This document shows, piece after piece, positions 7,843 through 40,343 of a DNA stretch of 64,000 nucleotides (the first letter of the stretch is position 1; each line of letters starts with the position of its first letter). The stretch spans positions 124,001 through 188,000 of the IMG/VR virus record IMGVR_UViG_3300035665_000001. The stretch is one strand, 5' to 3'. The position numbers and the translations under genes are program-made. The notes under the pieces are model-generated. The model was given only the letters and a program-made list of their open reading frames with translations, was not told the DNA's origin and made no database searches.

Positions 7843-8256
7843 ATGAGGTTAACAGTGTATAGTCATTTTTACAAAAGAAAATACGTTGTTCGATATGAAT
7901 ATATTGGAACTGATTTAAATATCGATATAGTTGAAGTATTTGAATTGTTGACCTTTGATAAAGGTATTGTCAGTATGTCACTCTATATTGAACCACATAA
8001 ATGGAAAAATATTGCATTATTGTCAATAACTGAAAGTAATAAACAAACACTTTTAAATCATGGTGTTGAAATTTTAGAATCTAAATTTTTGTATGATGAT
8101 GAAATAGATGCTTTGATTCAATTGGCTTTTATTTGTTCTAAATATATGGTTGCACCCAGTAAAATTTTTGATTGTTCGAATGGTAGATTAACTACCATAG
8201 CTTATAAAAAATTGGTAAATACATTTTATGATGATTTCCCAGAGAAATATATTTAA
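7843..8256 (+). CDS. Hypothetical protein ending in FPEKYI
   Basis: Start probably 7843 or GTG 7855 (GAGG RBS; TAGTATAAT at about 7812). Confidence 0.6.
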   Translation: MRLTVYSHFYKRKYVVRYEYIGTDLNIDIVEVFELLTFDKGIVSMSLYIEPHKWKNIALLSITESNKQTLLNHGVEILESKFLYDDEIDALIQLAFICSKYMVAPSKIFDCSNGRLTTIAYKKLVNTFYDDFPEKYI

Positions 8257-8265
8257 GGAGTTTAA

Positions 8266-8829
8266 ATGATTAAAATAGGATTAATTGGAGCCCCAGGTTG
8301 TGGTAAATCGACACTTGCTGCGTATGTATATGCTATGCTAAAAGATAAGGGTGTTGATGGTGAATTAGTTTCAGAATATATTCGTGAACATGTAAATAGG
8401 CATAAGCGAGTTCCCAGCATAACATTTCAGGGCGTTATTTACGAACGCCAATTAGAAAAAGAAAAAATAATTCCACAACATTTGGGTTTTTTTATAACTG
8501 ATAGTCCGCATATTTTATCCTATATTTTCGCATCATTGTATATAGATTATGGTGATCCAGATCAAATTGAATTGTTAGGAGATTTATACCTTAAATTTGT
8601 TAGACAGTCAAGAGATGCCTATGATTTAATTTATGTTTTAGATCATAACCATCCACCTAAAATGGATGATGGTGTGCGTTATCAAAATGATGATGAAATG
8701 GAATTATTAAAACGAGTTATACCTACATTTTTAGATATGCACAAGATTTCATATACAGTATTGGATGGAACAATATCCACAAAAGAACGTGCTGAGATGG
8801 TTGTTAATGATGTTTTGAAATTATTGTAA
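8266..8829 (+). CDS. NadR-like/AAA_28 P-loop nucleotide kinase/ATPase
   Basis: GAPGCGKST, ELVSEYIRE, FITDSP, DDGVRYQ motifs. Confidence 0.8.
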   Translation: MIKIGLIGAPGCGKSTLAAYVYAMLKDKGVDGELVSEYIREHVNRHKRVPSITFQGVIYERQLEKEKIIPQHLGFFITDSPHILSYIFASLYIDYGDPDQIELLGDLYLKFVRQSRDAYDLIYVLDHNHPPKMDDGVRYQNDDEMELLKRVIPTFLDMHKISYTVLDGTISTKERAEMVVNDVLKLL

Positions 8830-8862
8830 TGTATGGGAGAAATTTTTAATTCCTCCCATACA
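8829..8862. terminator. Hairpin between convergent genes
   Basis: ATGTATGGGAG...CTCCCATACAT inverted repeat. Confidence 0.65.
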
Positions 8863-8892
8863 TTACATATCAAGTTAAGCCATTGCTGGAGT

Positions 8893-9552
8893 TTATTTTG
8901 TTGTTTTTGTGAGGGATACTACTTTATTTAACAGTTTGTTGGCTAATGTCAATTGATTTGTTGGTAAAACCTTTTCTATTTTTGATTTCAACGACTTAAT
9001 AATGTCAGTAATACCTGGTTCGTGATGTCCACCTGCATTACCATGTGCAGCATGGGCATCTTTACTTTCCCACGGTAATACTATGTGTACCCCAGTTAAC
9101 GCAGAAACCATATGTAATGGGCCAGTTATTAGATGTGCTGTAGCGGTATCAAGCTGTAATAGAACATCAATTACGTTTTGTTGACTAAACGCTTTTTGAA
9201 TATCCCCTTTAAGATCTTTTGCTTGTATTTGACAATTTTTAAATTTTTCTTTGTCACCCGAAGCTTTTGCTTGAGTTGCAGCTAAACCTAATAGGAAAGA
9301 TTTCACTAATGTCTTTCCACCTTTTGCTAAAACTTGAATTAATCCGGGTTTTGTATTGTGAAATTCAAAACCCCATTCTTTAAATTTATCGGTTAAACCA
9401 TCCAATTTACCTTTTAATAAATCTAAAATTGAACTTTCAGTCAAAATAGATTCATCATCTATGACATCAATTAAAAAAGCATATTCTAATACTAGTAATT
9501 CTTGATTAGTTAAATGAGTACCATCATCAACTAATAATTGTTTTAATTTCAT
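8893..9552 (-). CDS. Putative virion internal/head protein
   Basis: N-terminus MKLKQLL.DDG..LTN.EL..LE shared with the neighbouring gene; ILTE motif. Confidence 0.45.
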   Translation of the reverse strand: MKLKQLLVDDGTHLTNQELLVLEYAFLIDVIDDESILTESSILDLLKGKLDGLTDKFKEWGFEFHNTKPGLIQVLAKGGKTLVKSFLLGLAATQAKASGDKEKFKNCQIQAKDLKGDIQKAFSQQNVIDVLLQLDTATAHLITGPLHMVSALTGVHIVLPWESKDAHAAHGNAGGHHEPGITDIIKSLKSKIEKVLPTNQLTLANKLLNKVVSLTKTTK

Positions 9553-9639
9553 AATAATTTTTTCTCCATGAATATAATTTGTAATTTTTTTTATTTACTT
9601 TGTCTTGTTGTAACTAACTACAATCTTATTTGGTAATGA

Positions 9640-10446: not shown

Positions 10447-10755
10447 AATAATTTTCCTTTGTAGATATTTTATTTTTCAATGTATATATATTTATTTATT
10501 ATTCATATTGAAAGACCTCAAACTTTAGTTGAAGGTTGATGGATAGTTTTGTAGTTAATTTGTGAAAATAATTGACTTTTTGCATGAATATTTTTCAATT
10601 GTGGTATAATTAGTAATAAATCAGTAATTCTGATTTTGGATAACTGTATATTAATATGAATACTTGTTAGTCTTGGAAACAAGCAGTGGAATCACCATTC
10701 TTTAGATTATTTAATGTAGAATAATAGAAAATGTATAATGCACAAGGAGAAATCG

Positions 10756-11157
10756 ATGCCCAATAAAAAATTTGAAATTCAATTAACACCTCAAAATGAT
10801 GAGTGGATAAACTTAATTCCAAACCCAACACAAAATATGGATGTTATCTTTAACAAAATTGTTGATTTGGTAATCAACGAAGGTATTTTTTTAGAGGTAA
10901 TTTCACAGTCACTAACATTGAATGACTTATCAAAATTTAAAATGACATATGCTAAAATGCAAGCAACTCGGGCAAAACATATGCTAGATTTGGAAATAAC
11001 ACCCACTCAAACTGAAAGAAAGAAAATAACACAAATAAAAACTGTAGAAGTGGAAAAAGAAATTATTATCCCAGATGAAATTAAAGTTCCTGTGGAAACT
11101 AAGATTGAGAAAAAAGAAAAGAAAATGTCTCATGGGTTTTCAGAAGAAAGCTTCTGA
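10756..11157 (+). CDS. Hypothetical protein
   Basis: AGGAG RBS before ATG 10756. Confidence 0.65.
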   Translation: MPNKKFEIQLTPQNDEWINLIPNPTQNMDVIFNKIVDLVINEGIFLEVISQSLTLNDLSKFKMTYAKMQATRAKHMLDLEITPTQTERKKITQIKTVEVEKEIIIPDEIKVPVETKIEKKEKKMSHGFSEESF

Positions 11158-11713: not shown

Positions 11714-12502
11714 TTAAAAAAATAAGTTTTGTAATTTATCTGGTAATAAATGGGTATTGTTAGTTTTTAATGCATATTTTAGCATATCAGGATAATCTTT
11801 CCAAAAATCACCATCATATCTGTCTACTAATTCATTATCTACAATTAATTTTGGTGATGTAACTTGACCAATTATCATAGAATCATGTATTTTTTCTAAT
11901 TCTGTTATTGCATTATGATTATCCGTGTTTAATGCTACGGTAAATGGACTTTCACCTTTTTTATTTAATGGATTAATAATTGTTTGTTTGGCTAAACTAA
12001 AAAATAAAGATAAATATGGAGTATATAAATTTATACCTGATAAAATATGCAATATATGAGTACCTGTTATACTTTGAGAATTTACATTGATATTTTTATG
12101 TGATATGACAATTTCAAACATTTTATTTGGGTTAAGTGAATTTAAAGCACTTTTCATAAGATTGAAATCGGCAGATCTTTTTTCTGTAGTTTTGTGGTGT
12201 TCTAGCATCGTTTCAATGGTCATTGAATAATCATGTGTCGCTGTTTTTGAAACCGATATTGCAACTTCGATAGGTGATAAAAAGTTACTACCACCAACAT
12301 CAACATTGCATCCTTGATCGATGAATTGAGTTACCTTTTGTAATAATTTTATTTTATCAAGATCCGAATATATTAATGCTTCTAAAAGTGTTATTTTATT
12401 GGCAACTCCTTCTATACTTGAAATATCGATAGTTATATCAGGTTTTATATTACCATTTTTTAATTGTTCTAACCATTGATCAATTTGTTCAATTGAAAAC
12501 AT
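11714..12502 (-). CDS. Ankyrin-repeat protein 1 with C-terminal LPDKLQNLFF tag
   Basis: GCNVDV..SPIEVA, NINVN...G.HILHIL, NPLNKKGESPFTVA repeats. Confidence 0.8.
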   Translation of the reverse strand: MFSIEQIDQWLEQLKNGNIKPDITIDISSIEGVANKITLLEALIYSDLDKIKLLQKVTQFIDQGCNVDVGGSNFLSPIEVAISVSKTATHDYSMTIETMLEHHKTTEKRSADFNLMKSALNSLNPNKMFEIVISHKNINVNSQSITGTHILHILSGINLYTPYLSLFFSLAKQTIINPLNKKGESPFTVALNTDNHNAITELEKIHDSMIIGQVTSPKLIVDNELVDRYDGDFWKDYPDMLKYALKTNNTHLLPDKLQNLFF

Positions 12503-12540
12503 TATTTTTCTCCTTTATAATAAATTGTTAATGTTATTCC

Positions 12541-13305
12541 TCAGAATAAAAGGTTTTGTATTTTTTCTGGCAATAAAAATTTTTTTTCTGATTTAACTGC
12601 GTATGTTAACATTGCTGGGTAATCTTTCCAAAAGTTACCAATATATCTGTCCACAATTTCATATTTCACAATGTGTACTGGTGATTTACCATCATAACCT
12701 ATTAACATTGCGTGTTTGTTTTGTTTCCAGGCTAATATTGTAGCAGTGTTGGTGTTTAATAATGCAACAGTCATTGGACTATATCCATCCTTATTTATTG
12801 GATTAACATCAATATCAGGTCTAAGAGTTAGAATATCGTTAAGATGTTCAACATAATATGCCACTGCAGATAATATATGTAAAATATGAGTATTGTCATC
12901 TATAGAAATTGTGTTAACATTGATGTTTTCATTTGTTACTACTAAATTAAACATAATATTTGCATGTAATGCACCTAACGAACATTTCATAATATTTAAA
13001 TCGTTTTCGTGTTTTTTGTGGTGAGATAATAATAATCTGATTAGATCAACATAATCATTATCCTCAGACCAAAAAATTGCAGTTTCAATAGCAGAACAAC
13101 CGACTTGTACACCATCCACATCACAACCAAGTGATATAAGTTTTTCAATTAGTTTAATTTTTTCATTTGGTGATACATTTGTTACTCGTATAGCTGCATC
13201 AAGTAAGGTTGTTTGAAATTCCGTATCAACCATAAAATCGGGGGTAATCTTATGCTCTTCTAAATCTGAAATCCATCCATTAAGTTCTGTTAAGGTAATA
13301 ATCAT
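12541..13305 (-). CDS. Ankyrin-repeat protein 2 with C-terminal LPEKIQNLLF tag
   Basis: Paralog of its neighbours; DVNPINKDGYSPMTVA. Confidence 0.8.
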   Translation of the reverse strand: MIITLTELNGWISDLEEHKITPDFMVDTEFQTTLLDAAIRVTNVSPNEKIKLIEKLISLGCDVDGVQVGCSAIETAIFWSEDNDYVDLIRLLLSHHKKHENDLNIMKCSLGALHANIMFNLVVTNENINVNTISIDDNTHILHILSAVAYYVEHLNDILTLRPDIDVNPINKDGYSPMTVALLNTNTATILAWKQNKHAMLIGYDGKSPVHIVKYEIVDRYIGNFWKDYPAMLTYAVKSEKKFLLPEKIQNLLF

Positions 13306-13342
13306 TTTTTCACCAATGCTTTTAAATATTCAAATAGGGGTG

Positions 13343-14131
13343 TTAAAAAAACACATTTTTTAATTTTTCTGGTAGTTGATTAAATTTACCATTTTTATAG
13401 GCATAATTTAACATTTTTGGATATTTTTTCCAAAAATCTCCAAAATATCTATCAACTAAATTGTTGTCTATAATGTCAGTTTCAGCACCAGTAAAATTTC
13501 CAATAATCATGGTATATTTTCTTTTTTGTAGTTCCCTGACTGCAACATAATTTTTTATGTTTAATGCCACTGTGAATGGACTATTACCATTGTTATCTAG
13601 TGGGTTTAGATGTACATCTGGTGCATAAGAAAATAAATCGCCAATGAATGCTGCGTGATGTTCAGATTCAACTAAAATATGTAAAATATGTTGGTTGTTA
13701 CTATTTAATGCGTTTACATCCACTTGTTTATTTGATACCACAAGTTTAAATCTGGAATCTGGATCGTAAGAATTTATTGCCGTTATCATTAGACTAAAAT
13801 CTGATTCTTGTGTGGAATTATGTTTTCTTAACATCATATTTAATATAGATGTATTTATAACATCATCTTTTAACTGTAGTGCAATTTCTAATGGTGATCT
13901 ATAATTTTTATCATTTAAACTAGCATAATTAACACCATCAACATCACAACCAAAATCTAATAATTGTTTTATTACGTCAAATTTGACATTTACAGGCTCA
14001 TTACTCAAAATAATACTTTCAAGCATAGTAATGTCACCTTTACTACTACCTATAATTGCTTTATTTGGCTTTAATTCACCAGTTCGCAACATTTCAATCC
14101 ACGAATCAAAATACTTTTTGTTAAAACTCAT
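13343..14131 (-). CDS. Ankyrin-repeat protein 3 with C-terminal LPEKLKNVFF tag
   Basis: Paralog; start at MSFNKK (GAAGG RBS) removes the overlap with the upstream gene. Confidence 0.8.
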   Translation of the reverse strand: MSFNKKYFDSWIEMLRTGELKPNKAIIGSSKGDITMLESIILSNEPVNVKFDVIKQLLDFGCDVDGVNYASLNDKNYRSPLEIALQLKDDVINTSILNMMLRKHNSTQESDFSLMITAINSYDPDSRFKLVVSNKQVDVNALNSNNQHILHILVESEHHAAFIGDLFSYAPDVHLNPLDNNGNSPFTVALNIKNYVAVRELQKRKYTMIIGNFTGAETDIIDNNLVDRYFGDFWKKYPKMLNYAYKNGKFNQLPEKLKNVFF

Positions 14132-14141
14132 ATGCATACCT

Positions 14142-14912
14142 TCAAAATAAAAGACTTGAAATTTTAGGTGGTAGCATATCAAATTTCCCAAATTTATATG
14201 CATATTGTAACATATCTGGATGATCTTTCCAAAAATCCCCATTATATCTATCAACTAATTCATAATGTATTATCTTTTTTGGGTCATTTACTTTTCCAAT
14301 TATTCTGCATTTTATATTGTGTTTTAATGCAGAAATTGCAGATGAATCATCTATGTTGATTGCCAATGTTAATGGACTTTCACCTTCGGAATTTAGTGGA
14401 TTGGATATTGTTTTTGGGTTATCCAAAATTAAATTAACAAACGTTGGGTTATAGATTCCTTCATAAATCATAATATGTAATATGTAATCACCATATATTG
14501 TTTTTTCATTTGTGTTTATATTATCACTACCAACAATTACAGGGAATAATGCTTCTGCATGTGGTGATTTAAACGACGTTTTTATTATTTCTAAATCTAA
14601 ATGGTTAGATTTATGGTGTTGTAACATTAGATATACAACATCTGTATAGTTCATGGTTTGCATAATTGCTCGCTCTATTGGGGTAAATACCCCTTCTGCA
14701 TCAACATCACACCCCAATTCAATTAACTTTTCTACTCTATCTAATAATTCCTTTTTAGTTAATTTACTGCTTATTGCAGCATCTAATAAATTTACGGAAT
14801 TCTTATTTCCCAAACTAACTAACTTATTTGGGTTCATTACACCGCTTTTTATTTTTTTTATCCATTCATCAATTTGTTCTGGAGTATAAACTGTAACTGT
14901 GTTCTTTGTCAT
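14142..14912 (-). CDS. Ankyrin-repeat protein 4 with C-terminal LPPKISSLLF tag
   Basis: Paralog; GCDVDAEG..TPIERA, NPLNSEGESPLTLA. Confidence 0.8.
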   Translation of the reverse strand: MTKNTVTVYTPEQIDEWIKKIKSGVMNPNKLVSLGNKNSVNLLDAAISSKLTKKELLDRVEKLIELGCDVDAEGVFTPIERAIMQTMNYTDVVYLMLQHHKSNHLDLEIIKTSFKSPHAEALFPVIVGSDNINTNEKTIYGDYILHIMIYEGIYNPTFVNLILDNPKTISNPLNSEGESPLTLAINIDDSSAISALKHNIKCRIIGKVNDPKKIIHYELVDRYNGDFWKDHPDMLQYAYKFGKFDMLPPKISSLLF

Positions 14913-14931
14913 TTTATTGCCTTTTGTGAAT

Positions 14932-15795
14932 TCAAATTATATCGCTGATAAAAAATATGTTTCGAATATTTTCTGGTAATGTTTCGGGAATATAAGTCAA
15001 AATTAATTTTATTAATGTTGGTTCTAATTTTATAACATTTTTTACCTGTGTACTGTTGATTTTATCAATCCATACATCTTTACCATCAATAAATTGTAAG
15101 ATGTAATCTTTATTAATTCCTTCCCCGCTAGTAATATAATCATAGACATCTTTTGAACCATTAGTTAAGGCTTCCAATGCTATTCGCTGAACATCACCTA
15201 ATCTTGTCAAACTACTTGTGTTCATTTCACCGTACTGAGAATATTCATAGCCCATGTTTCGAAATAAATTTTCACGATTCTTGTTTTTTTCTGAAAAATT
15301 AAAAATTTCTTTTATGAAATCTAAATCATTATGTTTTGCTGCAATGATACACACTAGATGTAAGAACCCATTATCTCTAATATTTCCCGATTTATGTAAA
15401 TTTCTTAAATTATTTCCAAAACATTTGTCGTTGATACCATACTTATCCATAAATTGAATAATATCTTTTAAGGTTTTAGTTTCCCCACCACTAATTGCGT
15501 GTGATACTGCCGATTGTAATTTTATATTTAAAGATGCGAATAGAATGTTTAACTTTTTTTCTTCATCACGACAATACGCCATAAGTTCCGGTAATATATC
15601 TTTATCCGAAACATTACTAGCCCCGTATTTTGTTTCTAATGATTTTTTAATTTTTTCAAATTTATCATCATAAGACTGATAGTTTGATAAAATTTTTGAA
15701 ATTTCATCCCCAATATTTTCGACACCTGAAAAATTATCTCTTGCATGTTTTTCCTGTGATGAAATTTTTTTAATATTTTTAGTTGCTGTATTCAT
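14932..15795 (-). CDS. Helical (possibly degenerate ankyrin) protein with LPENIRNIFF tag
   Basis: Member of the array; near-terminal motif. Confidence 0.6.
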   Translation of the reverse strand: MNTATKNIKKISSQEKHARDNFSGVENIGDEISKILSNYQSYDDKFEKIKKSLETKYGASNVSDKDILPELMAYCRDEEKKLNILFASLNIKLQSAVSHAISGGETKTLKDIIQFMDKYGINDKCFGNNLRNLHKSGNIRDNGFLHLVCIIAAKHNDLDFIKEIFNFSEKNKNRENLFRNMGYEYSQYGEMNTSSLTRLGDVQRIALEALTNGSKDVYDYITSGEGINKDYILQFIDGKDVWIDKINSTQVKNVIKLEPTLIKLILTYIPETLPENIRNIFFISDII

Positions 15796-15816
15796 AATTT
15801 GTGTCGATTGATTGAG

Positions 15817-16725
15817 TTAAAAAAACAAATTTTTTATTTTTTCCGGTAAATATCTATTATCTTTTGTAATCTTATATAACAATTTACTCACTATTGGGGA
15901 TTGAATATCAACTATGCGTTTTAACCATGGTGTGTAATCTTCTTCAGCAAATTTACCCAATTCTATTAAATTGCAGAATAATATTCCTGTTTCTGTTGTA
16001 TAATAATTTCTTATTAGTGATGCTAAAGTATCCATAGCTTGTTTATCGGTAGATAAAACGGTTTCATACTTTTTCATAATATCGTCGATTGTTTCACCAC
16101 CATTGAAAAATAATATTTCACTTGGAAATGTTTTAATCGCTGATAACATCATTCGAAATAATTCAGGCGAATAATTTGCATCAACCAGAGAATAGTAAAA
16201 ATGTAAGTCTTTAAGTGTTCGGAAAATTGCCCATGACTTATCAGGACTTATTGATTTAGCCTGTTTAACCAATTCTTTTTTAAAAAAGAATTCCATATCA
16301 GAAAACCAAGGTTTTTCCGAGAGAGCCGTAAACCAATGTCCAGAACCGCCACCATCATAGTTCAACACTGCGTAAACTAATATTCCAATGTCATAATTAT
16401 TAAATCTGATTTTATCATTCAGTGAAATATTTTTGTACATGAACTTATAACTCCAGGGTGGTTTATTTTTCCCTTTTATGAGTTTATTGAATTCATTAAA
16501 TATCACCGACCAAATAAATTCACAGTTTTCCGTGTTGTTTGCTATACCGGATGCATATTCATATAATGCTTCATTTTTTGAATTTCGCAGTAATCCTCTC
16601 ACAAACTCAGCTTTTTGTATATAATGAGTATCCTTTAAACTGTCATTACATAATTTAATAAATTCGATTGGGTTTTTGGGTGAATGTAGTTTTTTAGCTT
16701 TTTCACCAGCTTCAAGGTAATCCAT
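15817..16725 (-). CDS. Hypothetical helical protein with LPEKIKNLFF tag
   Basis: GGAG RBS; terminal motif. Confidence 0.65.
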   Translation of the reverse strand: MDYLEAGEKAKKLHSPKNPIEFIKLCNDSLKDTHYIQKAEFVRGLLRNSKNEALYEYASGIANNTENCEFIWSVIFNEFNKLIKGKNKPPWSYKFMYKNISLNDKIRFNNYDIGILVYAVLNYDGGGSGHWFTALSEKPWFSDMEFFFKKELVKQAKSISPDKSWAIFRTLKDLHFYYSLVDANYSPELFRMMLSAIKTFPSEILFFNGGETIDDIMKKYETVLSTDKQAMDTLASLIRNYYTTETGILFCNLIELGKFAEEDYTPWLKRIVDIQSPIVSKLLYKITKDNRYLPEKIKNLFF

Positions 16726-16736
16726 ATTATCTCCAT

Positions 16737-17591
16737 TTAAAAGAAAATTAGATTTTTAACCTTTTCAGGTAAAAAATCGACATTTTTAGTTTTGTTATAT
16801 AATAATTTTTTTATATCATCTGGACAGTTTGGATTTTTACAAAAGTTTAGAATAGTAGCTATTCTAAAATTCGACATCATTGATTGTGAACTTAAAACAC
16901 GAGTCAATAATTTCCCCAACTCTATTCCATTTGCTACTACTCGCCACTCTAAGTTGTGGTTAGTTAATAATGCTTCGACTAAATCATCTGTATCTAATGT
17001 TCGGATTTTCCAATCCTTTGCTTTATCACATACAGCTTCAAAGATTTTTGGCATTTTTAATAATCCTGGGTTTGATGCCATCATAATTAGATTTTTATCA
17101 GATTTTATATTTTTCAATAATATTTTTTCAGGTGCGTTAGGATGTTTGAAAAAATCTGCTCGTTGTCTTTCTAACCAACTTTTATCTACTTGTGGATTAT
17201 TTTTAGGTATTAGCGAACTATAAATTTCTTCTAATTGTTTTGGTGAGGTATGTTTTGATTTCCAAAATTTAAATGGTAGTCCTCTAGCTAAACCATTTTC
17301 CCATACGTCATCGAATAATTCTTTCGAACCATTATCAAATAATTTATAAGTGTCGTTGCCATAAATAATCAAAAATTTTTCAAGATTAATATTTGCCAGT
17401 TCTCTGATAATATCATCTGTACAGTTTTTTTCTTCCGATATTTTTAGATAAATTTCCCATGGAGTGTGGATACTTGTTCCAATTAAGTGGGTTGGGGTAT
17501 TTTTTATGGTTTTTACTAATTCTTCTAATTCAACATGAGAAATACTCGGATTTTTAAGTTTTTCATAGCAATCATCATACATATTTATCAT
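16737..17591 (-). CDS. Helical-repeat (LRV/HEAT-like) protein with LPEKVKNLIFF tag
   Basis: KHPNAP, SNPGL, TNHNL, KNPNCP repeats; terminal motif. Confidence 0.65.
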   Translation of the reverse strand: MINMYDDCYEKLKNPSISHVELEELVKTIKNTPTHLIGTSIHTPWEIYLKISEEKNCTDDIIRELANINLEKFLIIYGNDTYKLFDNGSKELFDDVWENGLARGLPFKFWKSKHTSPKQLEEIYSSLIPKNNPQVDKSWLERQRADFFKHPNAPEKILLKNIKSDKNLIMMASNPGLLKMPKIFEAVCDKAKDWKIRTLDTDDLVEALLTNHNLEWRVVANGIELGKLLTRVLSSQSMMSNFRIATILNFCKNPNCPDDIKKLLYNKTKNVDFLPEKVKNLIFF

Positions 17592-17634
17592 TTTTCGGAC
17601 CTTTTAACATTGTTCTAGACATATTATTATAATA

Positions 17635-17686
17635 TATTTATAGGTGTTTTTAATGTTCACTTTATTTTAAAAGGTCAGTATAAATA
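17635..17686. promoter_or_regulatory. Divergent T4-type late promoters (TATAAATA on both strands)
   Basis: TATAAATA on minus at 17635-17642 and on plus at 17679-17686; related ATAAATA precedes most structural genes. Confidence 0.7.
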
Positions 17687-17739
17687 TTATTTGAATAGTT
17701 TTAAATTATTAAGTTTTAATAACAAAAAGGAGATACAAA

Positions 17740-18555
17740 ATGGTTGATTCAATTTTTAAAAAAATGGGTAGTGTAGTTGCAACCGCTGTTGCAAATGAAG
17801 CATCTGCCAGACAGGCGGCAGTTACTACTTTAACCACTGCATTAGAAACTGCTAATACTAATAGACAAAATGCTATTTCAACTGAAGCATCTGCAAGACA
17901 AGCCGCAGATACTACTTTAACAAATAATCTTGCTTCTGAAGCAACTTCAAGAGCAACTGCTGATAACAATTTGACTACAGCTATCAATACCGAAAAAGCT
18001 AGAATTGATGCTATTTTATCAGCATCATCTGCTGATAAAGATTCATTTGCTGAAATTGTTACTTTGATTAACTCAGTTGATACTACTAATGATAACGCAT
18101 TCGCATCATATGTAACATCTAATAATGCAGCAGTCGCGGCATTAGATACTGCGTATAAAGCTGCTGATACTACATTAACTAATAATTTGGCATTAAAAGC
18201 ACCAATTGCAAACCCAACATTTACTGGTGTTGCAACTTTCGTAGGTATTAAAGAAACTAAAATTGCTATGTCAGCAAACAACATTGATTTAGCTACAGGG
18301 TCTGTATTCAGTAAAACTATTTCAGGTGCTACTACATTAACTATTTCAAATTCACCTACATCTGGTTTAGTAGGAACTTTTATTCTTAACCTTACTAATG
18401 GTGGTTCATCAACTATTACTTGGTTTAGTGGTATTAAATGGGTTGGTGGTACAGCTCCAACTTTAACAACTGCTGGTAGAGATAGATTGGGTTTCATTAC
18501 TGAAGATGGTGGTACAACTTGGGATGGTTTTGTAATGGGTAAAGATCTTAAATAA
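17740..18555 (+). CDS. Tail/whisker fibre shaft or adaptor protein (MVDSIFKK family)
   Basis: EASARQAAD coiled-coil repeats; KAPIANPTFTG; C-terminal ITW...KW.GG.APTLT..G.D...F.T.DGGTTW domain. Confidence 0.75.
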   Translation: MVDSIFKKMGSVVATAVANEASARQAAVTTLTTALETANTNRQNAISTEASARQAADTTLTNNLASEATSRATADNNLTTAINTEKARIDAILSASSADKDSFAEIVTLINSVDTTNDNAFASYVTSNNAAVAALDTAYKAADTTLTNNLALKAPIANPTFTGVATFVGIKETKIAMSANNIDLATGSVFSKTISGATTLTISNSPTSGLVGTFILNLTNGGSSTITWFSGIKWVGGTAPTLTTAGRDRLGFITEDGGTTWDGFVMGKDLK

Positions 18556-18565
18556 GGAGATTTTT

Positions 18566-19807
18566 ATGATTAAAGACATTATATTGTGTGCAAATACCCC
18601 AAAGGTATCTAGTGGAACTACATATGCGAGTAGTTCAAATACTACCGCTAGTACAAACCGTGGAACTCCAGTATCACAAGCCTTTAATACATCGGGATCA
18701 TATTTTATATTTGGGACAACATCTGCTGGAAACTACTTACAGGTATCATTTGGATTTGCAGTATCCGTTACACAGGTAACATATCGAAATGCTGTTGGTA
18801 GTAGCTGGGCACCAACAAGTGTAAAAATTAGGTATAGTAATGATGGCAGTACATGGAATGATGCTGTCACTTACTCTGATAACGCCAGTACATCTTTACA
18901 AACTATATCTGTATCTGGTGGTTCTGGTTCTTATTGGCAGTTATACCAAAATAGTAGCACTCGTGCTGGTAGTGGTGGTTATGAGTGGCACATGGATAGT
19001 TTTTCTATGACTGGTTCGTATGGATTAGTTAATGGTCAGATTTCTTATACTGTTCCAGGTACTTATACATGGGTTTGTCCGCAAGGAATAACTAGTGTTT
19101 GTGCAGTTGCTATTGGTGGTGGTAGTGGAGGCTGTCATTATACTGGTGGTGCTGGTGGCGGTTTATCTTACCAAAATAATATTTCTGTAACGCCAGGTCA
19201 ATCTTATACTGTAGTTGTAGGTGCAGGTGCGGTTGGTACAGGTTGGACTTATGGAAAAGGTGGCGATAGTAGTGTTTTTGGTATGGTTGCTGGTGGCGGT
19301 GGTACAATCGGAGGTTTAGGTTATAATTCTACTCCACCTGGTGGTGTTGGTAATGCTGGAACTGGTGGGTTAGGAGAGGGTTATTTTAGAAATAATTCTG
19401 TCTACAATGTTGGTGGTAGTGGTGCTGGTGGTTACGGATACAATGGTGGCGTAGGTACATATATCACTAGTTCACATGGTAATGGAAATGGTGGTGGTGG
19501 TACTGGTATTTTTGGTGGTACTGTTGGTGGATCTGGTGGTACATATGGGTTTGGTAATGCTGGATATACTGGAAGCGGTGGTGCTGGTGGATCTGGTGGT
19601 ACATCCGGTGGATTAGTAACTGGGTGGACAACAGACAGTAGTGCAAGTAGTGGTTCTGGTACACCTGGCAGTGGCGGTTTATACGGTGGTGGTGGTGGTT
19701 CTGGATGTGGATATGGGTATGTTAGTTCCACTGGTGGAAATGGTGCTATACGTATCATCTGGGGTGCTGGTCGTGCGTTCCCAAATACATTAACTGGAGA
19801 CTTATAA
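18566..19807 (+). CDS. Glycine-rich fibre/receptor-binding protein with discoidin-like N-terminal domain
   Basis: MIKDIIL leader; YLQV.F..V..V...YSNDG.TW; PGTYTWVCP...AIGGG; GGNGAIRIIWG. Confidence 0.75.
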   Translation: MIKDIILCANTPKVSSGTTYASSSNTTASTNRGTPVSQAFNTSGSYFIFGTTSAGNYLQVSFGFAVSVTQVTYRNAVGSSWAPTSVKIRYSNDGSTWNDAVTYSDNASTSLQTISVSGGSGSYWQLYQNSSTRAGSGGYEWHMDSFSMTGSYGLVNGQISYTVPGTYTWVCPQGITSVCAVAIGGGSGGCHYTGGAGGGLSYQNNISVTPGQSYTVVVGAGAVGTGWTYGKGGDSSVFGMVAGGGGTIGGLGYNSTPPGGVGNAGTGGLGEGYFRNNSVYNVGGSGAGGYGYNGGVGTYITSSHGNGNGGGGTGIFGGTVGGSGGTYGFGNAGYTGSGGAGGSGGTSGGLVTGWTTDSSASSGSGTPGSGGLYGGGGGSGCGYGYVSSTGGNGAIRIIWGAGRAFPNTLTGDL

Positions 19808-22344: not shown

Positions 22345-22451
22345 ATAACATTCTGTTATAATTGACATTTTGTCCCCACTCAAAATTAAATTTGTCTGGG
22401 GATTTTTTGTGCTCGCCGATAAATAATTTTTAATATAATGTGGAGTATAAA

Positions 22452-29877: not shown

Positions 29878-30306
29878 TTATCCTTTTAAATCAGCTGTAA
29901 GTAACTCCAATTTTTTTTCCCAATCGAGAATATCTTCCAAAAAAAATGGTTCGTTATTGTCAAATGTAGTATATTCATCACCTAAAGAATCGGAATAAAG
30001 CACTCCATCATCATGTTTTTTATTAGTTTTTTCCACTACTCTGGTTGGTGGTGTAGTATTTTCATGAACTATTACATTCTGTTTCAAATTCAAAACTTTA
30101 TTGGGTTCGGTAATCATTATTTTACCAGGCTCAACAGTCTCACGCATTTGCTGGATTATTTCTGCATGTGGTGAAGGTTTTGTTTCTGAAACATACACAC
30201 TATCAATCTTTTTTACTTCATCGACCAAATCAGAATCGGTTCGTTTATGTTTATCTGATCGTCCCCATTGACTTTTACCATGGGTAATAATTATTCCCAT
30301 ATTCAC
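29878..30306 (-). CDS. Low-complexity hypothetical protein
   Basis: GGAG RBS. Confidence 0.6.
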   Translation of the reverse strand: MNMGIIITHGKSQWGRSDKHKRTDSDLVDEVKKIDSVYVSETKPSPHAEIIQQMRETVEPGKIMITEPNKVLNLKQNVIVHENTTPPTRVVEKTNKKHDDGVLYSDSLGDEYTTFDNNEPFFLEDILDWEKKLELLTADLKG

Positions 30307-30339
30307 TCCAATAATAATTTTAATATTTTTTGGTTATAT

Positions 30340-30606
30340 TTATATTAATTTTTCGGGGTAATGTAATTCTAACTGTTTTGTAAATTGTGGTTTTATTTTT
30401 ATTTCAATTGGAGTTATCACATCTATAGTTCCGTCAGTGTTATATCTTATACATATACTGACATATTTTTCATTCATAATATGTACATAATTTGATGAAA
30501 TAAAATTATTAATATTATGTTCCATATTATGAATTAGATTCTCAGTCAATAATTCAAATGATGAACTATCGGTTAATTGTTCGATGTAATCAATCAAACT
30601 TTTCAT
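30340..30606 (-). CDS. Hypothetical protein ending in YPEKLI
   Basis: ORF in a tight operon. Confidence 0.6.
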   Translation of the reverse strand: MKSLIDYIEQLTDSSSFELLTENLIHNMEHNINNFISSNYVHIMNEKYVSICIRYNTDGTIDVITPIEIKIKPQFTKQLELHYPEKLI

Positions 30607-31409: not shown

Positions 31410-31456
31410 TTAATAAATCCTTTAGTTATTAATATTATACTATAATTAATTGGATT

Positions 31457-33269: not shown

Positions 33270-34082
33270 TCAAAATATTAATAGTTGTTTCAGTTTTTTA
33301 GGTAATATAGTTTCATCTTTAGTGTACTTATACATTTCAATTTTTATTTTATCTGGACTGTTTTTATGTTTTGCAATGGCAATTTTTCTTGATGTTGTGG
33401 TACATTTATCAAAAAAATCAACTAAAATTTTTGTTGATGTATCTTTGAATTGTGTTAAAACGTTAACAATCTGGTCTTCAAATACATCATCATCCGATAA
33501 CTGATATTCCACTTCATCTCGATACCAATCATACATGTCATCGTCAGACATAGAACTGAATAATTTATGTAAAAAAACAATTGTTTCTTTGTTTGCTATG
33601 TTATACGAGATAGTTATAGTTGCGAATATTCGGTTAAAAGGCTCATCTGTAATATCAAACCATAATGGTCTCCCTAAAACACAATAATGTAAAAAACTAT
33701 ATGGGGATTTTGAATTAAAATACTTGATCCAGTCCAATTTATTACTGGTACCTACACCAGGGGTAAGTTTAAATAGGTGATTTAAAGTATTAAAATGATC
33801 ATCTGTATTTACAAAATTATCAAGATAAACAACATTCGCAAATTTATTCAAAACATCTAAATTGAATGGTCCCTGTTGACTACATATTAAACTTTTATAA
33901 AAAGAGATTCTATTAGACGCTTTTTCTATATTCTCCGATATTTCAAAAATCTCCAATAATTCTGTATTTGAAAAAGTGAATTTACTTAGAAATTCACTAT
34001 TCCTCGCAGTTATAGATGTATTAAAAAATTCTTTGATCTGTTTTGATTTATCCACAATATCACTTTTTTTTAATTTACTCAT
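33270..34082 (-). CDS. Helical-repeat protein with C-terminal LPKKLKQLLIF tag
   Basis: Tail IAKHKNSP..IK..MYKYTKD...LP matches the 15817 and 16737 tails; TAAATA repeats upstream. Confidence 0.65.
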   Translation of the reverse strand: MSKLKKSDIVDKSKQIKEFFNTSITARNSEFLSKFTFSNTELLEIFEISENIEKASNRISFYKSLICSQQGPFNLDVLNKFANVVYLDNFVNTDDHFNTLNHLFKLTPGVGTSNKLDWIKYFNSKSPYSFLHYCVLGRPLWFDITDEPFNRIFATITISYNIANKETIVFLHKLFSSMSDDDMYDWYRDEVEYQLSDDDVFEDQIVNVLTQFKDTSTKILVDFFDKCTTTSRKIAIAKHKNSPDKIKIEMYKYTKDETILPKKLKQLLIF

Positions 34083-34258
34083 AAACACCCTCGTTTGTTT
34101 TTTTATTTATTTATTTATTTGTTATTCTCTTGTCATAAGACCTCACACTTTAATTCGTTGCACAAGTTAAAAAAATTGATGGTGTACATTCATATACCAA
34201 ACGTGAATCGTGAAAAAATCATCAACTCTAAATTAAAGTTGATGATTTTGATTAGATG

Positions 34259-38189: not shown

Positions 38190-38343
38190 TTTTTCTCTCT
38201 TTTAAGGTTATTTTTGCAAATTAGTTTGATGAGGAGTGTTTTTTAAATGTTAAAATGTGGCATTTTTTTGGTTTTCGTAGGGAAGGATTGTAGTATCTTA
38301 ATGTTGATGGATAACACCAACATTAAGATGTAATTTTTGTTGC

Positions 38344-38829
38344 TTAATCAATAAATGATGATGCTTTTCCATTATCATCAATTAGAATATAAGCCGAACT
38401 TCTACCGGCATATGCCCTAACAACAATAGAACCGTTTGCTCGATAAGGAGGAACAGTATCTAATGACCACCCTTTATTTTCTTCAACATATTTTTTTGCG
38501 ATACTCAAAGCATCATCTTTTTCTTTTTTTGATAACTCAGTAGTTTTATCATCTTTAACACTATCGGCAGTTTGAGATTTTTTTGTTATTTCTGATACAG
38601 GTTTATCAACACCTTCACCAAACTTTTCATCTGCCGCAGAAATATTTTGTTTAGCAGTAGCACCACTGGTATTGTAGATTCCATAAAACCAACTTTTTTC
38701 TTCTGCATCCCATTTCAAACCCATTTTTTTTGCAATTTCTTTATCTTTGAAATCAACTTTATAATACCGTTTTGTTACCAAAGTGGGGGCTTGTTTTGTT
38801 TCATTAATCAATAATTCACGAACTTTCAT
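38344..38829 (-). CDS. Late protein with DUF5710-like domain
   Basis: Y.V.FKDKE.AKK.G.KWD...KSWF; MKVRELLINE leader; late motif at 38861. Confidence 0.55.
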   Translation of the reverse strand: MKVRELLINETKQAPTLVTKRYYKVDFKDKEIAKKMGLKWDAEEKSWFYGIYNTSGATAKQNISAADEKFGEGVDKPVSEITKKSQTADSVKDDKTTELSKKEKDDALSIAKKYVEENKGWSLDTVPPYRANGSIVVRAYAGRSSAYILIDDNGKASSFID

Positions 38830-38907
38830 TTAGAATTCTCCATTTACTATATTTTATCAGTATTTATATTTTTCATCAAAAAAAGTGAATGATTTTCTGT
38901 GATTTCA

Positions 38908-39990
38908 TTACACTATTTTCGTTTTATTTTCGAAGATATACTGAATTTCATCAAATTCATCAAAATTTGGTAGTTCAAAGTTTTTTACCTGGTTTGAAAT
39001 AATATTATACTCTAATTTTTTATGATCTCGGTTATTTAAATTTTGAGTTATTTGTTTTTCACCAATTAAGAAAACCACAGCCTTATGATTATACTGTGTG
39101 GTTGGTATTTTAATAAGTTTATTCAAGCGATGTTCCTTAGTTAAATTTGTCATATCAACTAAAATGTTTTCTTTGTTTTTTACTGCATTTAGTAAATCTT
39201 TTAAACTCTGGTCGTGAGCTTTTTTAATATTTTTTTTATAATCGACAGAATCGTATCCCATTTTTTTATTATAAAAAAAGTTGTCAACTGATATTATACT
39301 ATAATTTGAAAAATCTGAATTGTTTTTGACAAACGTTGATTTTCCACTACCAGATAACCCAATTAAAAATACAGCATCCAATTTTCTTTTTTCCCTAAAC
39401 TGTTGTTTATTATATGGGATATAGTTTTCTAAATGAGTGAACTGGTTGTCAATAAATACCAGCTCATCATTAAAATCGGGTGAAATTTCTCTACCGTACG
39501 CATCAGCCTTAACAAAATCAATAAGTTCTTTTAAAAATTCCGGTTGGTGTCCATAACATAAATCCAAATTTTTTATTTTTTCCTCAATAGGAATTTTGTT
39601 CCAAAGAGTACCGTGTCTAGCAATTAATTGCAATGTTAATAAAAAATCGATTTCAAATTCTGTTGAGGCATGTTTTAGAATATCTATACTTTTGACCATT
39701 GATACGTTTTCATGGTCATAAAACGCTACTCGCCCGTTCTCTTTTTCATATCTTACATAAACTTTACCGATATCATGCAGTATTGCCGCAAAAATATGGT
39801 TATTATTATTTAATGCTAAATCCAATACCATTTCAGTATGACACCATACAGTTCCTTCAAAATGAAAAGGATTTTTACTACCATTACTATGTGTATGATC
39901 ACATAATACCATAGCATTGTATAATTCAACATAATTGGTTTTAAACCAATTCACAATTTTTTGTTTTTCAACTGTCATTAGATTAGCCAT
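38908..39990 (-). CDS. HD-domain phosphohydrolase fused to a P-loop (polynucleotide-kinase-like) domain
   Basis: H.EG.VW.HT.MV, LHDIGK, F..HE..S, AD..GR; GLSGSGKST, VDMTNL. Confidence 0.85.
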   Translation of the reverse strand: MANLMTVEKQKIVNWFKTNYVELYNAMVLCDHTHSNGSKNPFHFEGTVWCHTEMVLDLALNNNNHIFAAILHDIGKVYVRYEKENGRVAFYDHENVSMVKSIDILKHASTEFEIDFLLTLQLIARHGTLWNKIPIEEKIKNLDLCYGHQPEFLKELIDFVKADAYGREISPDFNDELVFIDNQFTHLENYIPYNKQQFREKRKLDAVFLIGLSGSGKSTFVKNNSDFSNYSIISVDNFFYNKKMGYDSVDYKKNIKKAHDQSLKDLLNAVKNKENILVDMTNLTKEHRLNKLIKIPTTQYNHKAVVFLIGEKQITQNLNNRDHKKLEYNIISNQVKNFELPNFDEFDEIQYIFENKTKIV

Positions 39991-40343
39991 TCTGGATTTT
40001 CTATTTGGATTTTTTTATATAATTCTATAAAATGTGAAAAATCTATACCATTGATTGACTCAAAATTTTTGAAAAATTCTTTAGCCCATAATTTTTCAGC
40101 TATCTCTTTATCTTGTATTTTAAACAGATAATTATAATTTGCAGGTGGAATATCAATATATACTGTAAGAAATTCCATATTATCGCTTTTGTCAAACTTA
40201 ACTGTGCGAAATGTGGCGGATTTATCTTGCAGTAAATCTACTAAAAATACTTTTTCAAGTTTAATAGTTTGTACCGCGGTATACGTTGGAATAAAAACAT
40301 ACCAATAGTAATTATGTGGCACTAGATCACTGGGTTTTATCAT
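39978..40343 (-). CDS. Hypothetical protein ending in NPEWLI
   Basis: ORF in an operon. Confidence 0.6.
   Translation of the reverse strand: MIKPSDLVPHNYYWYVFIPTYTAVQTIKLEKVFLVDLLQDKSATFRTVKFDKSDNMEFLTVYIDIPPANYNYLFKIQDKEIAEKLWAKEFFKNFESINGIDFSHFIELYKKIQIENPEWLI

What the first reader, a model, noticed from the sequence alone, without database searches (positions are those of the whole stretch)
7843..40343. Second, shorter terminal tag (F/Y/N)PE(K/W)(Y/L)I on dispersed small proteins
Seen: three unrelated proteins end FPEKYI (stop 8256), YPEKLI (30340) and NPEWLI (39978), each after a predicted helix. At least two lie behind TATAAT-type rather than late motifs. Inferred: an early-class counterpart of the LPEK tag, possibly binding a shared hub or protease.
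Basis: partly seen in the sequence, partly recalled or inferred. Interest (0 to 1): 0.6.

Follow-up and report, generated by a model that had tools for sequence, protein, structure and literature searches.

The report
Shared C-terminal tag on phage proteins
Many unrelated small proteins of this uncultured jumbo phage and its relatives end in the same conserved six-residue tail (aromatic-Pro-Glu-x-hydrophobic-Ile/Val), which looks like a portable address label whose reader is still unknown.

Summary
The three window proteins end FPEKYI, YPEKLI and NPEWLI. The 306-kb phage has two more strict cases and two variants, against 0.04-0.13 expected. A relative with 83% capsid identity has 26 such ends against 0.19 expected, and 24 of its 39 motif copies sit exactly at the C-terminus. 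The 41 tagged proteins form 33 BLAST families. With the tag trimmed, the one family with a deep profile matches none of the others. They are soluble and 77-300 aa long. In two families with 30-36 homologues, the Pro and its neighbour are among the best-conserved positions, and the stop codon is fixed three residues after Glu/Gln. Synonymous codons vary, so selection acts on the peptide. AlphaFold2 models of both families show a long last helix, a break at the aromatic residue, and a one-turn helix starting at Pro. All three window genes lie in units headed by GTATAAT-type boxes. The longer LPEK-type tag, partly on ankyrin proteins, is partly behind T4-type late boxes. My best reading is a portable C-terminal recognition peptide read by one shared partner. 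That partner was not identified. Candidates are the phage DnaJ/Hsp70 set, a conserved double-AAA+ ATPase, or a host protease. A cis-acting structural cap is the main rival.

The parts
7843..8256 (+). Gene for a 137-aa protein ending FPEKYI. Tag codons are 8236-8253 and the stop is 8254-8256.
   Evidence: The ORF is and the start is set by homologue N-termini. The family has 37 homologues, with only the tag's P and E invariant. The AF2 model has pLDDT 95 and shows helix 118-131, a break at F132 and a turn at 133-136.
30340..30606 (-). Gene for an 88-aa protein ending YPEKLI. Tag codons are 30343-30360 and the stop is 30340-30342.
   Evidence: The ORF is. It is found only in this phage, and no confident fold was obtained.
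39978..40343 (-). Gene for a 121-aa protein ending NPEWLI. Tag codons are 39981-39998.
   Evidence: The ORF is, and it is an orphan in the word-indexed database. Its orthologue in G001 (27% identity) keeps YPELIV followed by 3 extra residues. The Atlas model weakly resembles SH3/Agenet barrels.
38908..39990 (-). Downstream HD + kinase-like gene whose ATG lies inside the E-W codons of the NPEWLI tag, giving a 13-nt overlap.
   Evidence: The overlap is shown, and the Pfam hits HD and AAA_33 are. The same PEWL[IV]-stop/MA.. junction recurs in G001.
8266..8829 (+). AAA_28 P-loop gene, the conserved downstream neighbour of the FPEKYI family.
   Evidence: The Pfam hit is. The synteny gp25/gp53 <-> [tagged]-AAA_28 is seen in four other contigs and in G001.
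7814..7820 (+). GTATAAT box, early-type and sigma-70-like, 23 nt before the ATG at 7843.
   Evidence: The box is read, and the motif class is enriched about 8-fold upstream of genes. This is a consensus match only.
31434..31440 (-). GTATAAT box in the intergenic gap heading the minus-strand unit 31409 -> 30340, which ends with the YPEKLI gene.
   Evidence: This is a consensus match only.
40988..40994 (-). GTATAAT box heading the minus-strand unit that contains the NPEWLI gene.
   Evidence: This is a consensus match only.
30337..30344 (-). T4-type late box TATAAATA overlapping the Ile codon and stop of the YPEKLI gene. It presumably serves the next gene, 29878-30306.
   Evidence: None of the other four G000 tags shows a late box at the stop.
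11714..17591 (-). Array of five long-tag genes (11714-12502, 12541-13305, 13343-14254, 15817-16725, 16737-17591) ending in the LPEK-type tail. The first three are ankyrin-like paralogues.
   Evidence: A late box lies about 50 nt upstream of 17591.
33270..34088 (-). A further long-tag gene, with a tail of the LP..L..LLIF type.
   Evidence: It is a paralogue of G000 12293-13060.

Best explanation
The tail [Y/F/H/N]-P-[E, rarely Q]-x-hydrophobic-[I/V/L]-COOH is a lineage-wide, portable C-terminal short linear motif. It sits on at least 33 BLAST-distinct families of small, soluble proteins. The genes lie in tightly packed early-type arrays in a T4-related, uncultured jumbo-phage lineage, probably the 'moraphages'.

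Shown: the motif is strongly enriched and tied to the exact chain end. It is kept in orthologues while the rest of the protein drifts. It is selected at the peptide level, not the DNA level. It follows a terminal helix: the helix breaks at the aromatic residue, Pro starts a one-turn helix, and the last two hydrophobic side chains and the free carboxylate end the chain.

Inferred: this hook is read in trans by one common partner, so that many different proteins are docked to, sorted by or handed over to the same machine. I rank proteostasis machinery first. The candidates are the phage J-protein with phage or host Hsp70, the conserved phage double-AAA+ ATPase, or a host AAA+ protease that would clear early proteins on schedule.

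The longer late-class LP..[VI]K[DN].F.F tail, found on larger proteins that are partly ankyrin-repeat proteins, would be a second label of the same general type.
For: Enrichment in this genome: 5 observed against 0.04-0.13 expected, and PE..I is the top pattern in an unbiased scan.

Related phages: G001 has 26 ends against 0.19 expected, 24 of its 39 motif copies lie exactly at the C-terminus, and 19 of 44 ORFs in one array are tagged. Seven of 36 ORFs in 20 kb of another related contig are tagged.

Carriers without detectable kinship: there are no pairwise hits. The 41 tagged proteins form 33 BLAST families. With the tag trimmed, the profile of one family matches no other tagged protein (hhalign probability under 2%). 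The two AF2 models differ in the order of their secondary-structure elements.

Purifying selection on the tag: in 36 homologues at 25-63% identity, the only invariant columns are the tag's P and E, and every full-length member stops 3 residues after E. In a second family of 30 sequences, F and P of the tag are invariant, the third position is Q, E or H, and 29 of 30 end at the same place. All 7 cross-genome families keep the tag.

Peptide level, not DNA level: Pro, Glu and stop codons vary much as in the genome at large, and downstream DNA is not conserved.

Compartment: only 2 of 41 carriers have a TM-like segment, and one of those is an over-long ORF call.

Context: one tagged gene sits in a conserved Hsp20 - tagged - Hsp70 block next to DnaJ in G000 and G003. 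DnaJ was found in three of the four related records and the two-ring AAA+ protein in all four.
Against: No receptor was found. The single complex prediction (DnaJ + Hsp70 substrate-binding domain + AAA+ N-domain + the 88-aa protein) gave no answer.

G001, which has the most tags, lacks Hsp70 and a clear Hsp20 in its recovered 87%, so the phage Hsp70 cannot be the general reader.

In both AF2 models the tail is ordered (last-block pLDDT 90 and 78). This fits a tail packed in cis at least as well as a free docking peptide.

An invariant acidic residue is not what general DnaK substrates favour; this rests on my knowledge of DnaK binding motifs, not on a test here.

The temporal class rests on consensus boxes only.
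Confidence: 0.55

Rival explanations
1. The tail is a cis-acting structural cap. It would be a helix stop with Pro at the first position of a final turn, folding two hydrophobic residues back onto the protein's own core. This would stabilise small fast-evolving proteins or hide their C-termini from host proteases that read free non-polar ends.
For: Both AF2 models place the tail right after the last helix with fairly high confidence (last-block pLDDT 90 and 78). The 18 residues before the tag are poor in Pro/Gly and rich in helix formers. E and Q interchange, as expected for a helix-start position; that expectation is established helix-capping knowledge.
Against: A generic capping device need not sit exactly at the chain end, yet 24 of 39 copies in G001 do. 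The stop position is fixed across two families. The motif is confined to one phage lineage and, within it, to small proteins of particular arrays. AF2 confidence may simply reflect the strong conservation in the alignments. Tail-to-core contacts could not be inspected because no coordinates are returned.
Confidence: 0.25
2. The shared tail is a relic of common descent. All carriers would belong to one hyper-divergent superfamily, for example a small beta-barrel plus C-terminal helices, and only its last six residues remain recognisable.
For: Two window proteins weakly resemble Tudor/chromo/SH3/Agenet-type barrels followed by helices (Z about 5, TM about 0.5). The genes lie in tandem arrays, which is typical of duplication.
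Against: No similarity is detectable once the tag is trimmed. Lengths range from 77 to 300 aa. The two confident models differ in the order of their secondary-structure elements, strands first in one and a helix followed by four strands and a helical hairpin in the other. The barrel matches are within the noise range the tool itself states. Even if this were true, it would not explain why only the tail is held constant.
Confidence: 0.1
3. The tail is a by-product of nucleotide-level signals at gene ends, such as ribosome-binding sites, overlapping start codons, promoters for the next gene, or recombination linkers between cassettes.
For: Trp in the tag often supplies the ATG of an overlapping downstream gene: PELW[IV]-stop with a 10-nt overlap and PEWL[IV]-stop with a 13-nt overlap. 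Odd residues such as Gly in PEGVL coincide with an AAGGAG box for the next gene. One tag overlaps a late box.
Against: The Pro codons are CCA 23, CCT 4, CCG 4 and CCC 2, and the Glu codons are GAA 26 and GAG 7, close to genome-wide usage. Stops are TAA, TGA or TAG. CCNGAR is not SD-like. About 13 of 33 tags have a called same-strand downstream start within 10 nt after the stop or overlapping it by up to 13 nt, and downstream DNA is not conserved. These signals explain some choices at the variable positions but not the invariant P-E or the terminal I/V.
Confidence: 0.03
4. The tail is specifically a degron. The non-polar end would be read by a host AAA+ protease (ClpXP, ClpAP, FtsH or Lon), giving early proteins a short life. 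This is a special case of the best explanation and is listed separately because it makes distinct predictions.
For: The free non-polar C-terminus is the classic determinant of C-terminal degradation in bacteria; this is established knowledge from the ssrA tag and non-polar C-terminal tails. The carriers are cytoplasmic and lie in early-type units.
Against: The invariant Pro-Glu and the aromatic residue are not part of any degron I know. The late-class long tag on about 40 proteins of G001 would be odd for a clearance signal. Nothing was tested.
Confidence: 0.2

Closest known systems
C-terminal peptide signals read at the free chain end (ssrA/ClpX-type degrons; Hsp70 EEVD tail read by TPR and class-B J-protein domains; class II PDZ ligands of the E-hydrophobic-hydrophobic-I/V type)
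   Same: It is a short motif of about 6 residues, tied to the extreme C-terminus, with hydrophobic last residues and an acidic residue a few positions upstream. It is portable between unrelated proteins.
   Different: The aromatic-Pro-Glu core matches none of these motifs as I recall them. No PDZ domain is encoded by the phages, and the carriers are cytoplasmic. The tail appears ordered after a helix rather than floppy.
Chaperone-addiction (ChAD) C-terminal extensions of TAC antitoxins, bound by SecB-like chaperones (Guillet et al. 2019, cited in PMC12619734)
   Same: It is a C-terminal extension that hands a small protein to a dedicated chaperone. The phage lineage here carries its own chaperone genes, and one tagged gene lies between Hsp20 and Hsp70.
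   Different: ChAD segments are longer and occur in one protein family. Here one hexapeptide sits on at least 33 families. No SecB search was run.
Poxvirus/Orientia ankyrin proteins with a C-terminal PRANC/F-box-like adaptor motif
   Same: This comparison concerns the companion long tag. Variable ankyrin or helical-repeat bodies carry one constant C-terminal LP-acidic-hydrophobic tail, in large tandem families.
   Different: The host is bacterial, as shown by Shine-Dalgarno boxes, T4-type late boxes and tailed-phage structural genes. The tail is only 10-12 residues long. No F-box or PRANC Pfam hit appears among 49 proteins. The short tag studied here has no ankyrin carriers.
T4 sliding-clamp-binding C-terminal tails of gp43, gp33 and gp55
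   Same: The lineage is T4-related, and the tails are hydrophobic or aromatic at the extreme C-terminus and shared by different proteins.
   Different: No gp45-type clamp was detected. The carriers are dozens of small proteins of unknown function, not the polymerase or late transcription factors. The motif sequence differs.
Moraphages (Perez-Hernandez et al. 2025, PMC12619734)
   Same: This is an uncultured aquatic jumbo-phage lineage of 200-307 kb that is T4-related and encodes DnaK, DnaJ and HSP20. This contig is 306,333 bp and encodes all three.
   Different: The paper does not mention any C-terminal motif, ankyrin proteins or paralogue arrays. Whether this contig is one of their 25 genomes was not checked.

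Membership tests
C-terminal short linear motif / sorting tag (generic class) | The motif is restricted to the extreme C-terminus. | tested here: met
   In G001, 24 of 39 copies of [YFHN]PE..[ILV] lie exactly at the end. In G000 the figure is 5 of 13.
C-terminal short linear motif / sorting tag (generic class) | The motif is carried by proteins that are otherwise unrelated. | tested here: met
   There are no pairwise hits. The 41 carriers form 33 BLAST families. The hhalign probability is under 2% with the tag trimmed.
C-terminal short linear motif / sorting tag (generic class) | The motif is conserved more strongly than the flanking sequence in orthologues. | tested here: met
   In A3, only P and E of the tag are invariant among 36 sequences. 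In A4, F and P of the tag are invariant and the stop is fixed in 29 of 30.
C-terminal short linear motif / sorting tag (generic class) | A receptor that reads the motif has been identified. | tested here: inconclusive
   The complex prediction gave no answer, and no candidate has direct support.
Class II PDZ ligand | The last residue is hydrophobic. | tested here: met
   The last residue is I in 22, V in 8 and L in 3 of 33 tags.
Class II PDZ ligand | The residue two positions before the last is hydrophobic. | tested here: not met
   Only 21 of 33 have L, Y or W there. The rest have K, R, N, H, E or G.
Class II PDZ ligand | A PDZ-domain reader is available in the same compartment. | tested here: not met
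   PDZ_2 and PDZ_6 are not found in G000-G003, while the controls are positive. The carriers lack signal or TM segments. Host PDZ proteins were not examined.
ssrA-type non-polar C-terminal degron | The last residues are non-polar and the carboxylate is free. | tested here: met
   The last two positions are almost always L, W, F, Y, I or V.
ssrA-type non-polar C-terminal degron | The tag confers protease-dependent instability. | not testable with these tools
   This needs half-life assays.
T4-type clamp-binding tail | A gp45-family sliding clamp is encoded by the phage. | tested here: not met
   PF09116 and PF02916 are absent from the contig, which is estimated 85% complete.
T4-type clamp-binding tail | The tail is carried by the polymerase or late transcription factors. 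| tested here: not met
   All carriers are 77-300 aa. The only Pfam hit among the 33 tagged proteins scanned is one weak phiKZ_IP match (E 1.7e-4).
ANK-PRANC / F-box-like adaptors (long tag only) | The N-terminal part contains ankyrin repeats. | tested here: met
   Seven of 49 long-tag proteins have them, with a best E-value of 1.8e-11.
ANK-PRANC / F-box-like adaptors (long tag only) | A C-terminal F-box/PRANC domain is recognisable. | tested here: not met
   No such Pfam family appears among the hits of the 49 proteins.
Moraphage lineage | The genome is a jumbo genome of 200-307 kb with DnaK, DnaJ and HSP20 and a T4-related capsid. | tested here: met
   The contig is 306,333 bp. It has a gp23-family capsid protein and Hsp70, DnaJ and Hsp20, matching the description in PMC12619734.
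Moraphage lineage | The genome is placed inside the published clade by phylogeny. | not tested
   The published genomes were not available to the tools.
Helix stop with Pro-initiated terminal turn (structural cap) | The motif directly follows an alpha-helix. | tested here: met
   The arrangement is H118-131, break, H133-136 in one model and H114-130, break, 132-134 in the other.
Helix stop with Pro-initiated terminal turn (structural cap) | The terminal hydrophobic residues are buried in the protein's own core. | not testable with these tools
   Model coordinates are not returned.

The most novel reading that the evidence does not exclude
Moraphage-like jumbo phages run a two-label C-terminal address code. 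A short label (aromatic-P-E-x-hydrophobic-I/V) marks small early proteins, and a long label (LP..[VI]K[DN].F.F) marks larger late proteins with ankyrin or helical repeats. Together the two labels mark about 20% of the predicted proteome of one member: 26 plus about 40 of 333 ORFs. In this reading each label is read by a dedicated phage-encoded receptor, such as the conserved double-AAA+ ATPase or the J-protein. The tagged proteins would then act as exchangeable adaptors or clients of one virus-encoded machine. That would be a bacterial-virus analogue of the constant-motif, variable-binder logic of eukaryotic viral ANK/F-box adaptors.
Probability: 0.25. Interest if true: 0.85.

Novelty: new variant of a known kind. 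Interest (0 to 1): 0.7.

Why it matters
Most phage early genes are orphans with no handle for study. Here one six-residue tail links dozens of them across a whole uncultured lineage. A single peptide bait could therefore identify a shared receptor and give a first functional foothold for about 8% of a jumbo phage's genes, or about 20% with the companion long tag. It could also provide a portable tag for engineering. If the tail proves to be only a structural cap, it is still an unusual case of convergent or retained end-capping under strong selection.

Tried and rejected
1. Chance was rejected by composition, internal-rate, column-shuffle, six-frame and unbiased-pattern controls.

2. Simple paralogy was rejected.

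3. A DNA-level cause was rejected for the invariant core, although Trp and Gly choices at the variable positions do track overlapping starts and SD boxes.

4. Near relatives among cultured phages: none was found for the region, the 88-aa protein or the FPEKYI family. The closest cultured capsids are only 31-33% identical.

5. The word-indexed protein search found only self-hits for the 121-aa and 159-aa proteins.

6. A codon-pattern scan of IMG/VR for YPELW[IV]-stop hit only G001 and G002 plus three contigs where the match is not an ORF end.

7. Candidate readers sought in the phage genomes and not found: gp45 clamp, PDZ and the Rce1-like/CPBP protease, which is present only in the separate contig L081 next to tagged genes.

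8. The prohead-protease-site idea for LPE|K was dropped because the acidic residue shifts register between G000 (LPEK) and G001 (LPxE).

9. The phage Hsp70 as a universal reader was dropped because G001 and G002 lack it.

10. Complex prediction (DnaJ + Hsp70 substrate-binding domain + AAA+ N-domain + the 88-aa protein) returned no answer, with a score of 0.24 against a mark of 0.34. It is not used as evidence either way.

11. Fold searches of both AF2 models gave only weak, generic matches.

Full report
**What the window is**

The window is bases 124,001-188,000 of a single 306,333-bp, 30% G+C virus record rated 85% complete. It is a tailed phage of the T4 kind. It has a gp23-family capsid protein, a gp24-like vertex protein, gp25/gp53 baseplate genes, a gp15-like sheath stabiliser, an SbcC-like nuclease, ribonucleotide reductase, and large Laminin_G_3 virion proteins.

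Upstream of genes, two box types are enriched 8-12-fold: TATAAATA, the T4 late type, and GTATAAT, which is sigma-70-like. AAGGAG boxes are also enriched.

The nearest cultured capsids are only 31-33% identical. The contig carries Hsp20, Hsp70 (split into two ORFs) and DnaJ. Its size and gene content fit the 'moraphages' described in 2025 (PMC12619734). That paper mentions no C-terminal motif and no ankyrin proteins.

**The observation**

Genome-wide, five of 374 ORFs end in PE..I. The two outside the window are YPENFI at 17,898-18,395(-) and YPERLI at 198,480-198,728(+). The controls were:
- Expectation is 0.04-0.13 by three different nulls, and none of 20,000 column shuffles reached five.
- Of about 7,200 non-gene frames that are open before a stop, one ends this way.
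- In an unbiased scan of all three-position patterns in the last seven residues, PE..I ranks first; 1% of full shuffles do as well.

There are also two variants. FPQFVI ends the gene at 197,221-197,679. A YPELV motif lies seven residues from the end of the gene at 24,272-24,679.

**Relatives**

A capsid-based search found related IMG/VR contigs, and I fetched four of them whole.

G001 is 289,880 bp with a capsid 83% identical to ours. It has 26 proteins ending [YFHN..]PE..[ILV], against 0.19 expected. Of its 39 copies of the motif anywhere in the proteome, 24 lie exactly at the C-terminus. In one 21-kb co-directional array, 19 of 44 ORFs are tagged. Another related contig, L081, has 7 tagged ORFs among 36.

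An end-anchored logo of 33 tails gives:
- aromatic/His/Asn at -6 (Y15, F9, H4, N3)
- Pro 33/33 at -5
- Glu 33/33 at -4
- L/K/Y/W/R at -3
- L/W/F/Y/I at -2
- I22/V8/L3 at -1

There is only faint amphipathic periodicity further upstream.

**Are the carriers related?**

Not detectably.
- The five G000 proteins do not hit each other.
- The 41 tagged proteins from five contigs fall into 33 BLAST families.
- With the last six residues trimmed, the 36-sequence profile of the FPEKYI family matches its own three members at 99.7-100% and every other tagged protein at under 2%.
- Pfam finds essentially nothing in them.
- They are 77-300 aa long (median 121), mildly acidic, and lack TM-like segments.

Two window proteins weakly resemble small Tudor/SH3/Agenet-type barrels followed by helices. 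I treat this only as a lead toward very remote kinship.

**Is the tail under selection?**

Yes, and more strongly than the rest of each protein. An exhaustive HMMER search with the FPEKYI protein gave 37 homologues. In the 36-sequence alignment the mean column identity is 32%. The only invariant columns are the tag's Pro and Glu. The Lys is at least 90% conserved, and every full-length member stops exactly three residues after Glu.

A second family was built around the G000 FPQFVI protein, with 30 sequences. It has invariant Phe-Pro. The third position is Q in 22, E in 7 and H in 1. Twenty-nine of 30 end at the same place.

All seven families that span two or more contigs keep the tag at 27-44% overall identity. 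One orthologue has three extra residues after it.

Codon choice at Pro, Glu, Ile and the stop is close to genome-wide usage, and downstream DNA is not conserved. The constraint is therefore on the peptide.

There is a side effect. Trp in the tag frequently supplies the ATG of an overlapping downstream gene, and rare residues at the variable positions coincide with the next gene's SD box. This explains some variation but not the core.

**Structure**

AlphaFold2 with the two family alignments gave confident models (pLDDT 95 and 91, pTM 0.83 and 0.80). Their secondary-structure elements come in different orders, but the ending is the same in both. A long last helix breaks at the aromatic residue. 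Pro then starts a one-turn helix. The last one or two residues are extended. The last-block pLDDT is 90 and 78.

The tail is predicted to be ordered. Whether it packs on its own protein could not be checked because coordinates are not returned.

**Temporal class**

Each of the three window genes lies in a unit headed by a GTATAAT-type box, at window 7814-7820(+), 31434-31440(-) and 40988-40994(-). The two tagged genes outside the window also have TATAAT-type boxes.

The long-tag genes are partly behind TATAAATA boxes. Examples are the head of the window array at about 17,640 and three genes outside the window. In G001 the short-tag array at 219-239 kb runs straight into a long-tag array at 239-273 kb whose first gene has a late box. 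These are consensus matches only.

**The companion long tag**

About 11 G000 proteins and about 40 G001 proteins end in LP + two charged or polar residues + [VIL] + [KQ] + [ND] + three or four hydrophobic residues ending in Phe. Seven of 49 carry ankyrin repeats.

Both tags place an acidic or amide residue before a bulky hydrophobic end with a free carboxylate. That is the only concrete link between them.

**Mechanism**

One hexapeptide is pinned to the chain end of dozens of proteins with no detectable kinship. It is the best-conserved element in one family and among the invariant positions in the other. It is confined to one lineage and to particular gene arrays. This pattern is what is expected of a portable recognition signal read by a common partner. 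I put this at 0.55.

The partner is unknown. The context offers three leads:
- A conserved Hsp20 - tagged gene - Hsp70 block next to DnaJ in G000 and G003.
- A J-protein in three of four genomes.
- A 1,055-aa protein with two AAA+ modules in all four, split into two ORFs in G000.

G001 lacks Hsp70, so any Hsp70 role would have to pass through the host's DnaK. The one complex prediction gave no answer and is not used as evidence.

A timed-degradation signal is a natural sub-case at 0.2. The main rival, at 0.25, is a cis-acting helix-stop and hydrophobic cap. The ordered tails in the models favour it. The strict end position and the lineage and array restriction count against it. Hyper-divergent common descent (0.1) and nucleotide-level causes (0.03) are less likely.

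**Comparison and novelty**

The tag behaves like known C-terminal peptide signals, namely degrons, EEVD tails, PDZ ligands and chaperone-addiction extensions. It matches none of their defining sequences or readers where I could test them (see the membership table).

I found no description of it in the one paper on this lineage or in the literature searches. I rate it a new variant of a known kind. There is a 0.25 chance that it is part of a dedicated, phage-encoded two-label sorting or adaptor system.

Noticed in passing
window 11714-17591(-) and 33270-34088(-); G000 12293-13060, 188164-190335, 193781-194593, 201604-202422; G001 about 239.9-283.6 kb: There is a second, longer C-terminal tag (LP, two charged residues, V/I/L, K/Q, N/D, then 3-4 hydrophobic residues ending in F). 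It is on about 11 proteins here and about 40 in relative G001, in long tandem arrays. Seven of 49 carriers have ankyrin repeats. The consensus differs slightly between the two phages.
   Followed up: partly
G000 13483-18841(-) (loci L001/L004): This is a phage chaperone block: Hsp20 (ending with an IPI-type motif), the tagged YPENFI gene, an HNH/NUMOD3 endonuclease, Hsp70 split into two ORFs (residues 1-195 and 191-597 of the Pfam model, with a 273-nt gap), and DnaJ. In G003 the Hsp70 is one intact 632-aa ORF and the Hsp20 - tagged - Hsp70 order is kept.
   Followed up: partly
G000 1110-5032(-); G001 154016-157183(+): A protein of about 1,055 aa with two AAA+ modules is conserved at 55-63% identity in all four related phages. 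In G000 it is split into two ORFs of 539 and 676 aa. It has no PDB sequence match.
   Followed up: partly
window 39978-39990; G001 222874, 232097, 232333, 238630, 191907 junctions: Trp codons inside the tag supply the ATG of the overlapping next gene. PELW[IV]-stop gives a 10-nt overlap with the next protein starting MG. PEWL[IV]-stop gives a 13-nt overlap with the next protein starting MA.
   Followed up: yes
window 30337-30344(-): A T4-type late box TATAAATA overlaps the last codon and stop of the YPEKLI gene, 31 nt before the next gene.
   Followed up: partly
G000 285997-305996(+): There is a possible third C-terminal class. Five proteins of 247-551 aa end in a polar run followed by ..LF (TDFLF, SDGLF, SNSLF, TSELF, TNLLF). 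This pattern was flagged by the unbiased scan.
   Followed up: no
window 2567-4240(-): A 557-aa ORF has thymidylate synthase matched in two stretches, with an HNH endonuclease region (about residues 154-411) in the same frame between them. It may be an intein-like or fused homing endonuclease. In related contigs ThyA is 284 aa.
   Followed up: no
window 6005-8829; L080, L081, L082, L083: A conserved local order is seen across related contigs: DNA ligase, then gp25 and gp53 on the other strand, then the FPEKYI-family gene and an AAA_28 P-loop gene. In L083 the tagged gene's place is taken by an AAA_33 gene.
   Followed up: partly
proteins P0030 (2229 aa) and P0039 (2613 aa): Two very large proteins from the representative library match the middle of the FPEKYI family (query residues about 40-119) in up to 8 separate stretches. 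This suggests that part of the fold also exists as a repeat in giant proteins.
   Followed up: no
L081 4030-4707; L082 8096-9325; unnamed JGI contig: Related contigs carry an Rce1-like/CPBP protease gene directly after two tagged genes, an IS605 OrfB/TnpB element, and, in a third contig, a flagellin gene and an anti-Pycsar Apyc1-like gene.
   Followed up: partly
window 22440-25139, 47449-50082, 50243-52855(+): There are three paralogous proteins of about 870-900 aa, each with four Laminin_G_3 domains. They are similar to virion and baseplate-wedge proteins of other large phages.
   Followed up: no
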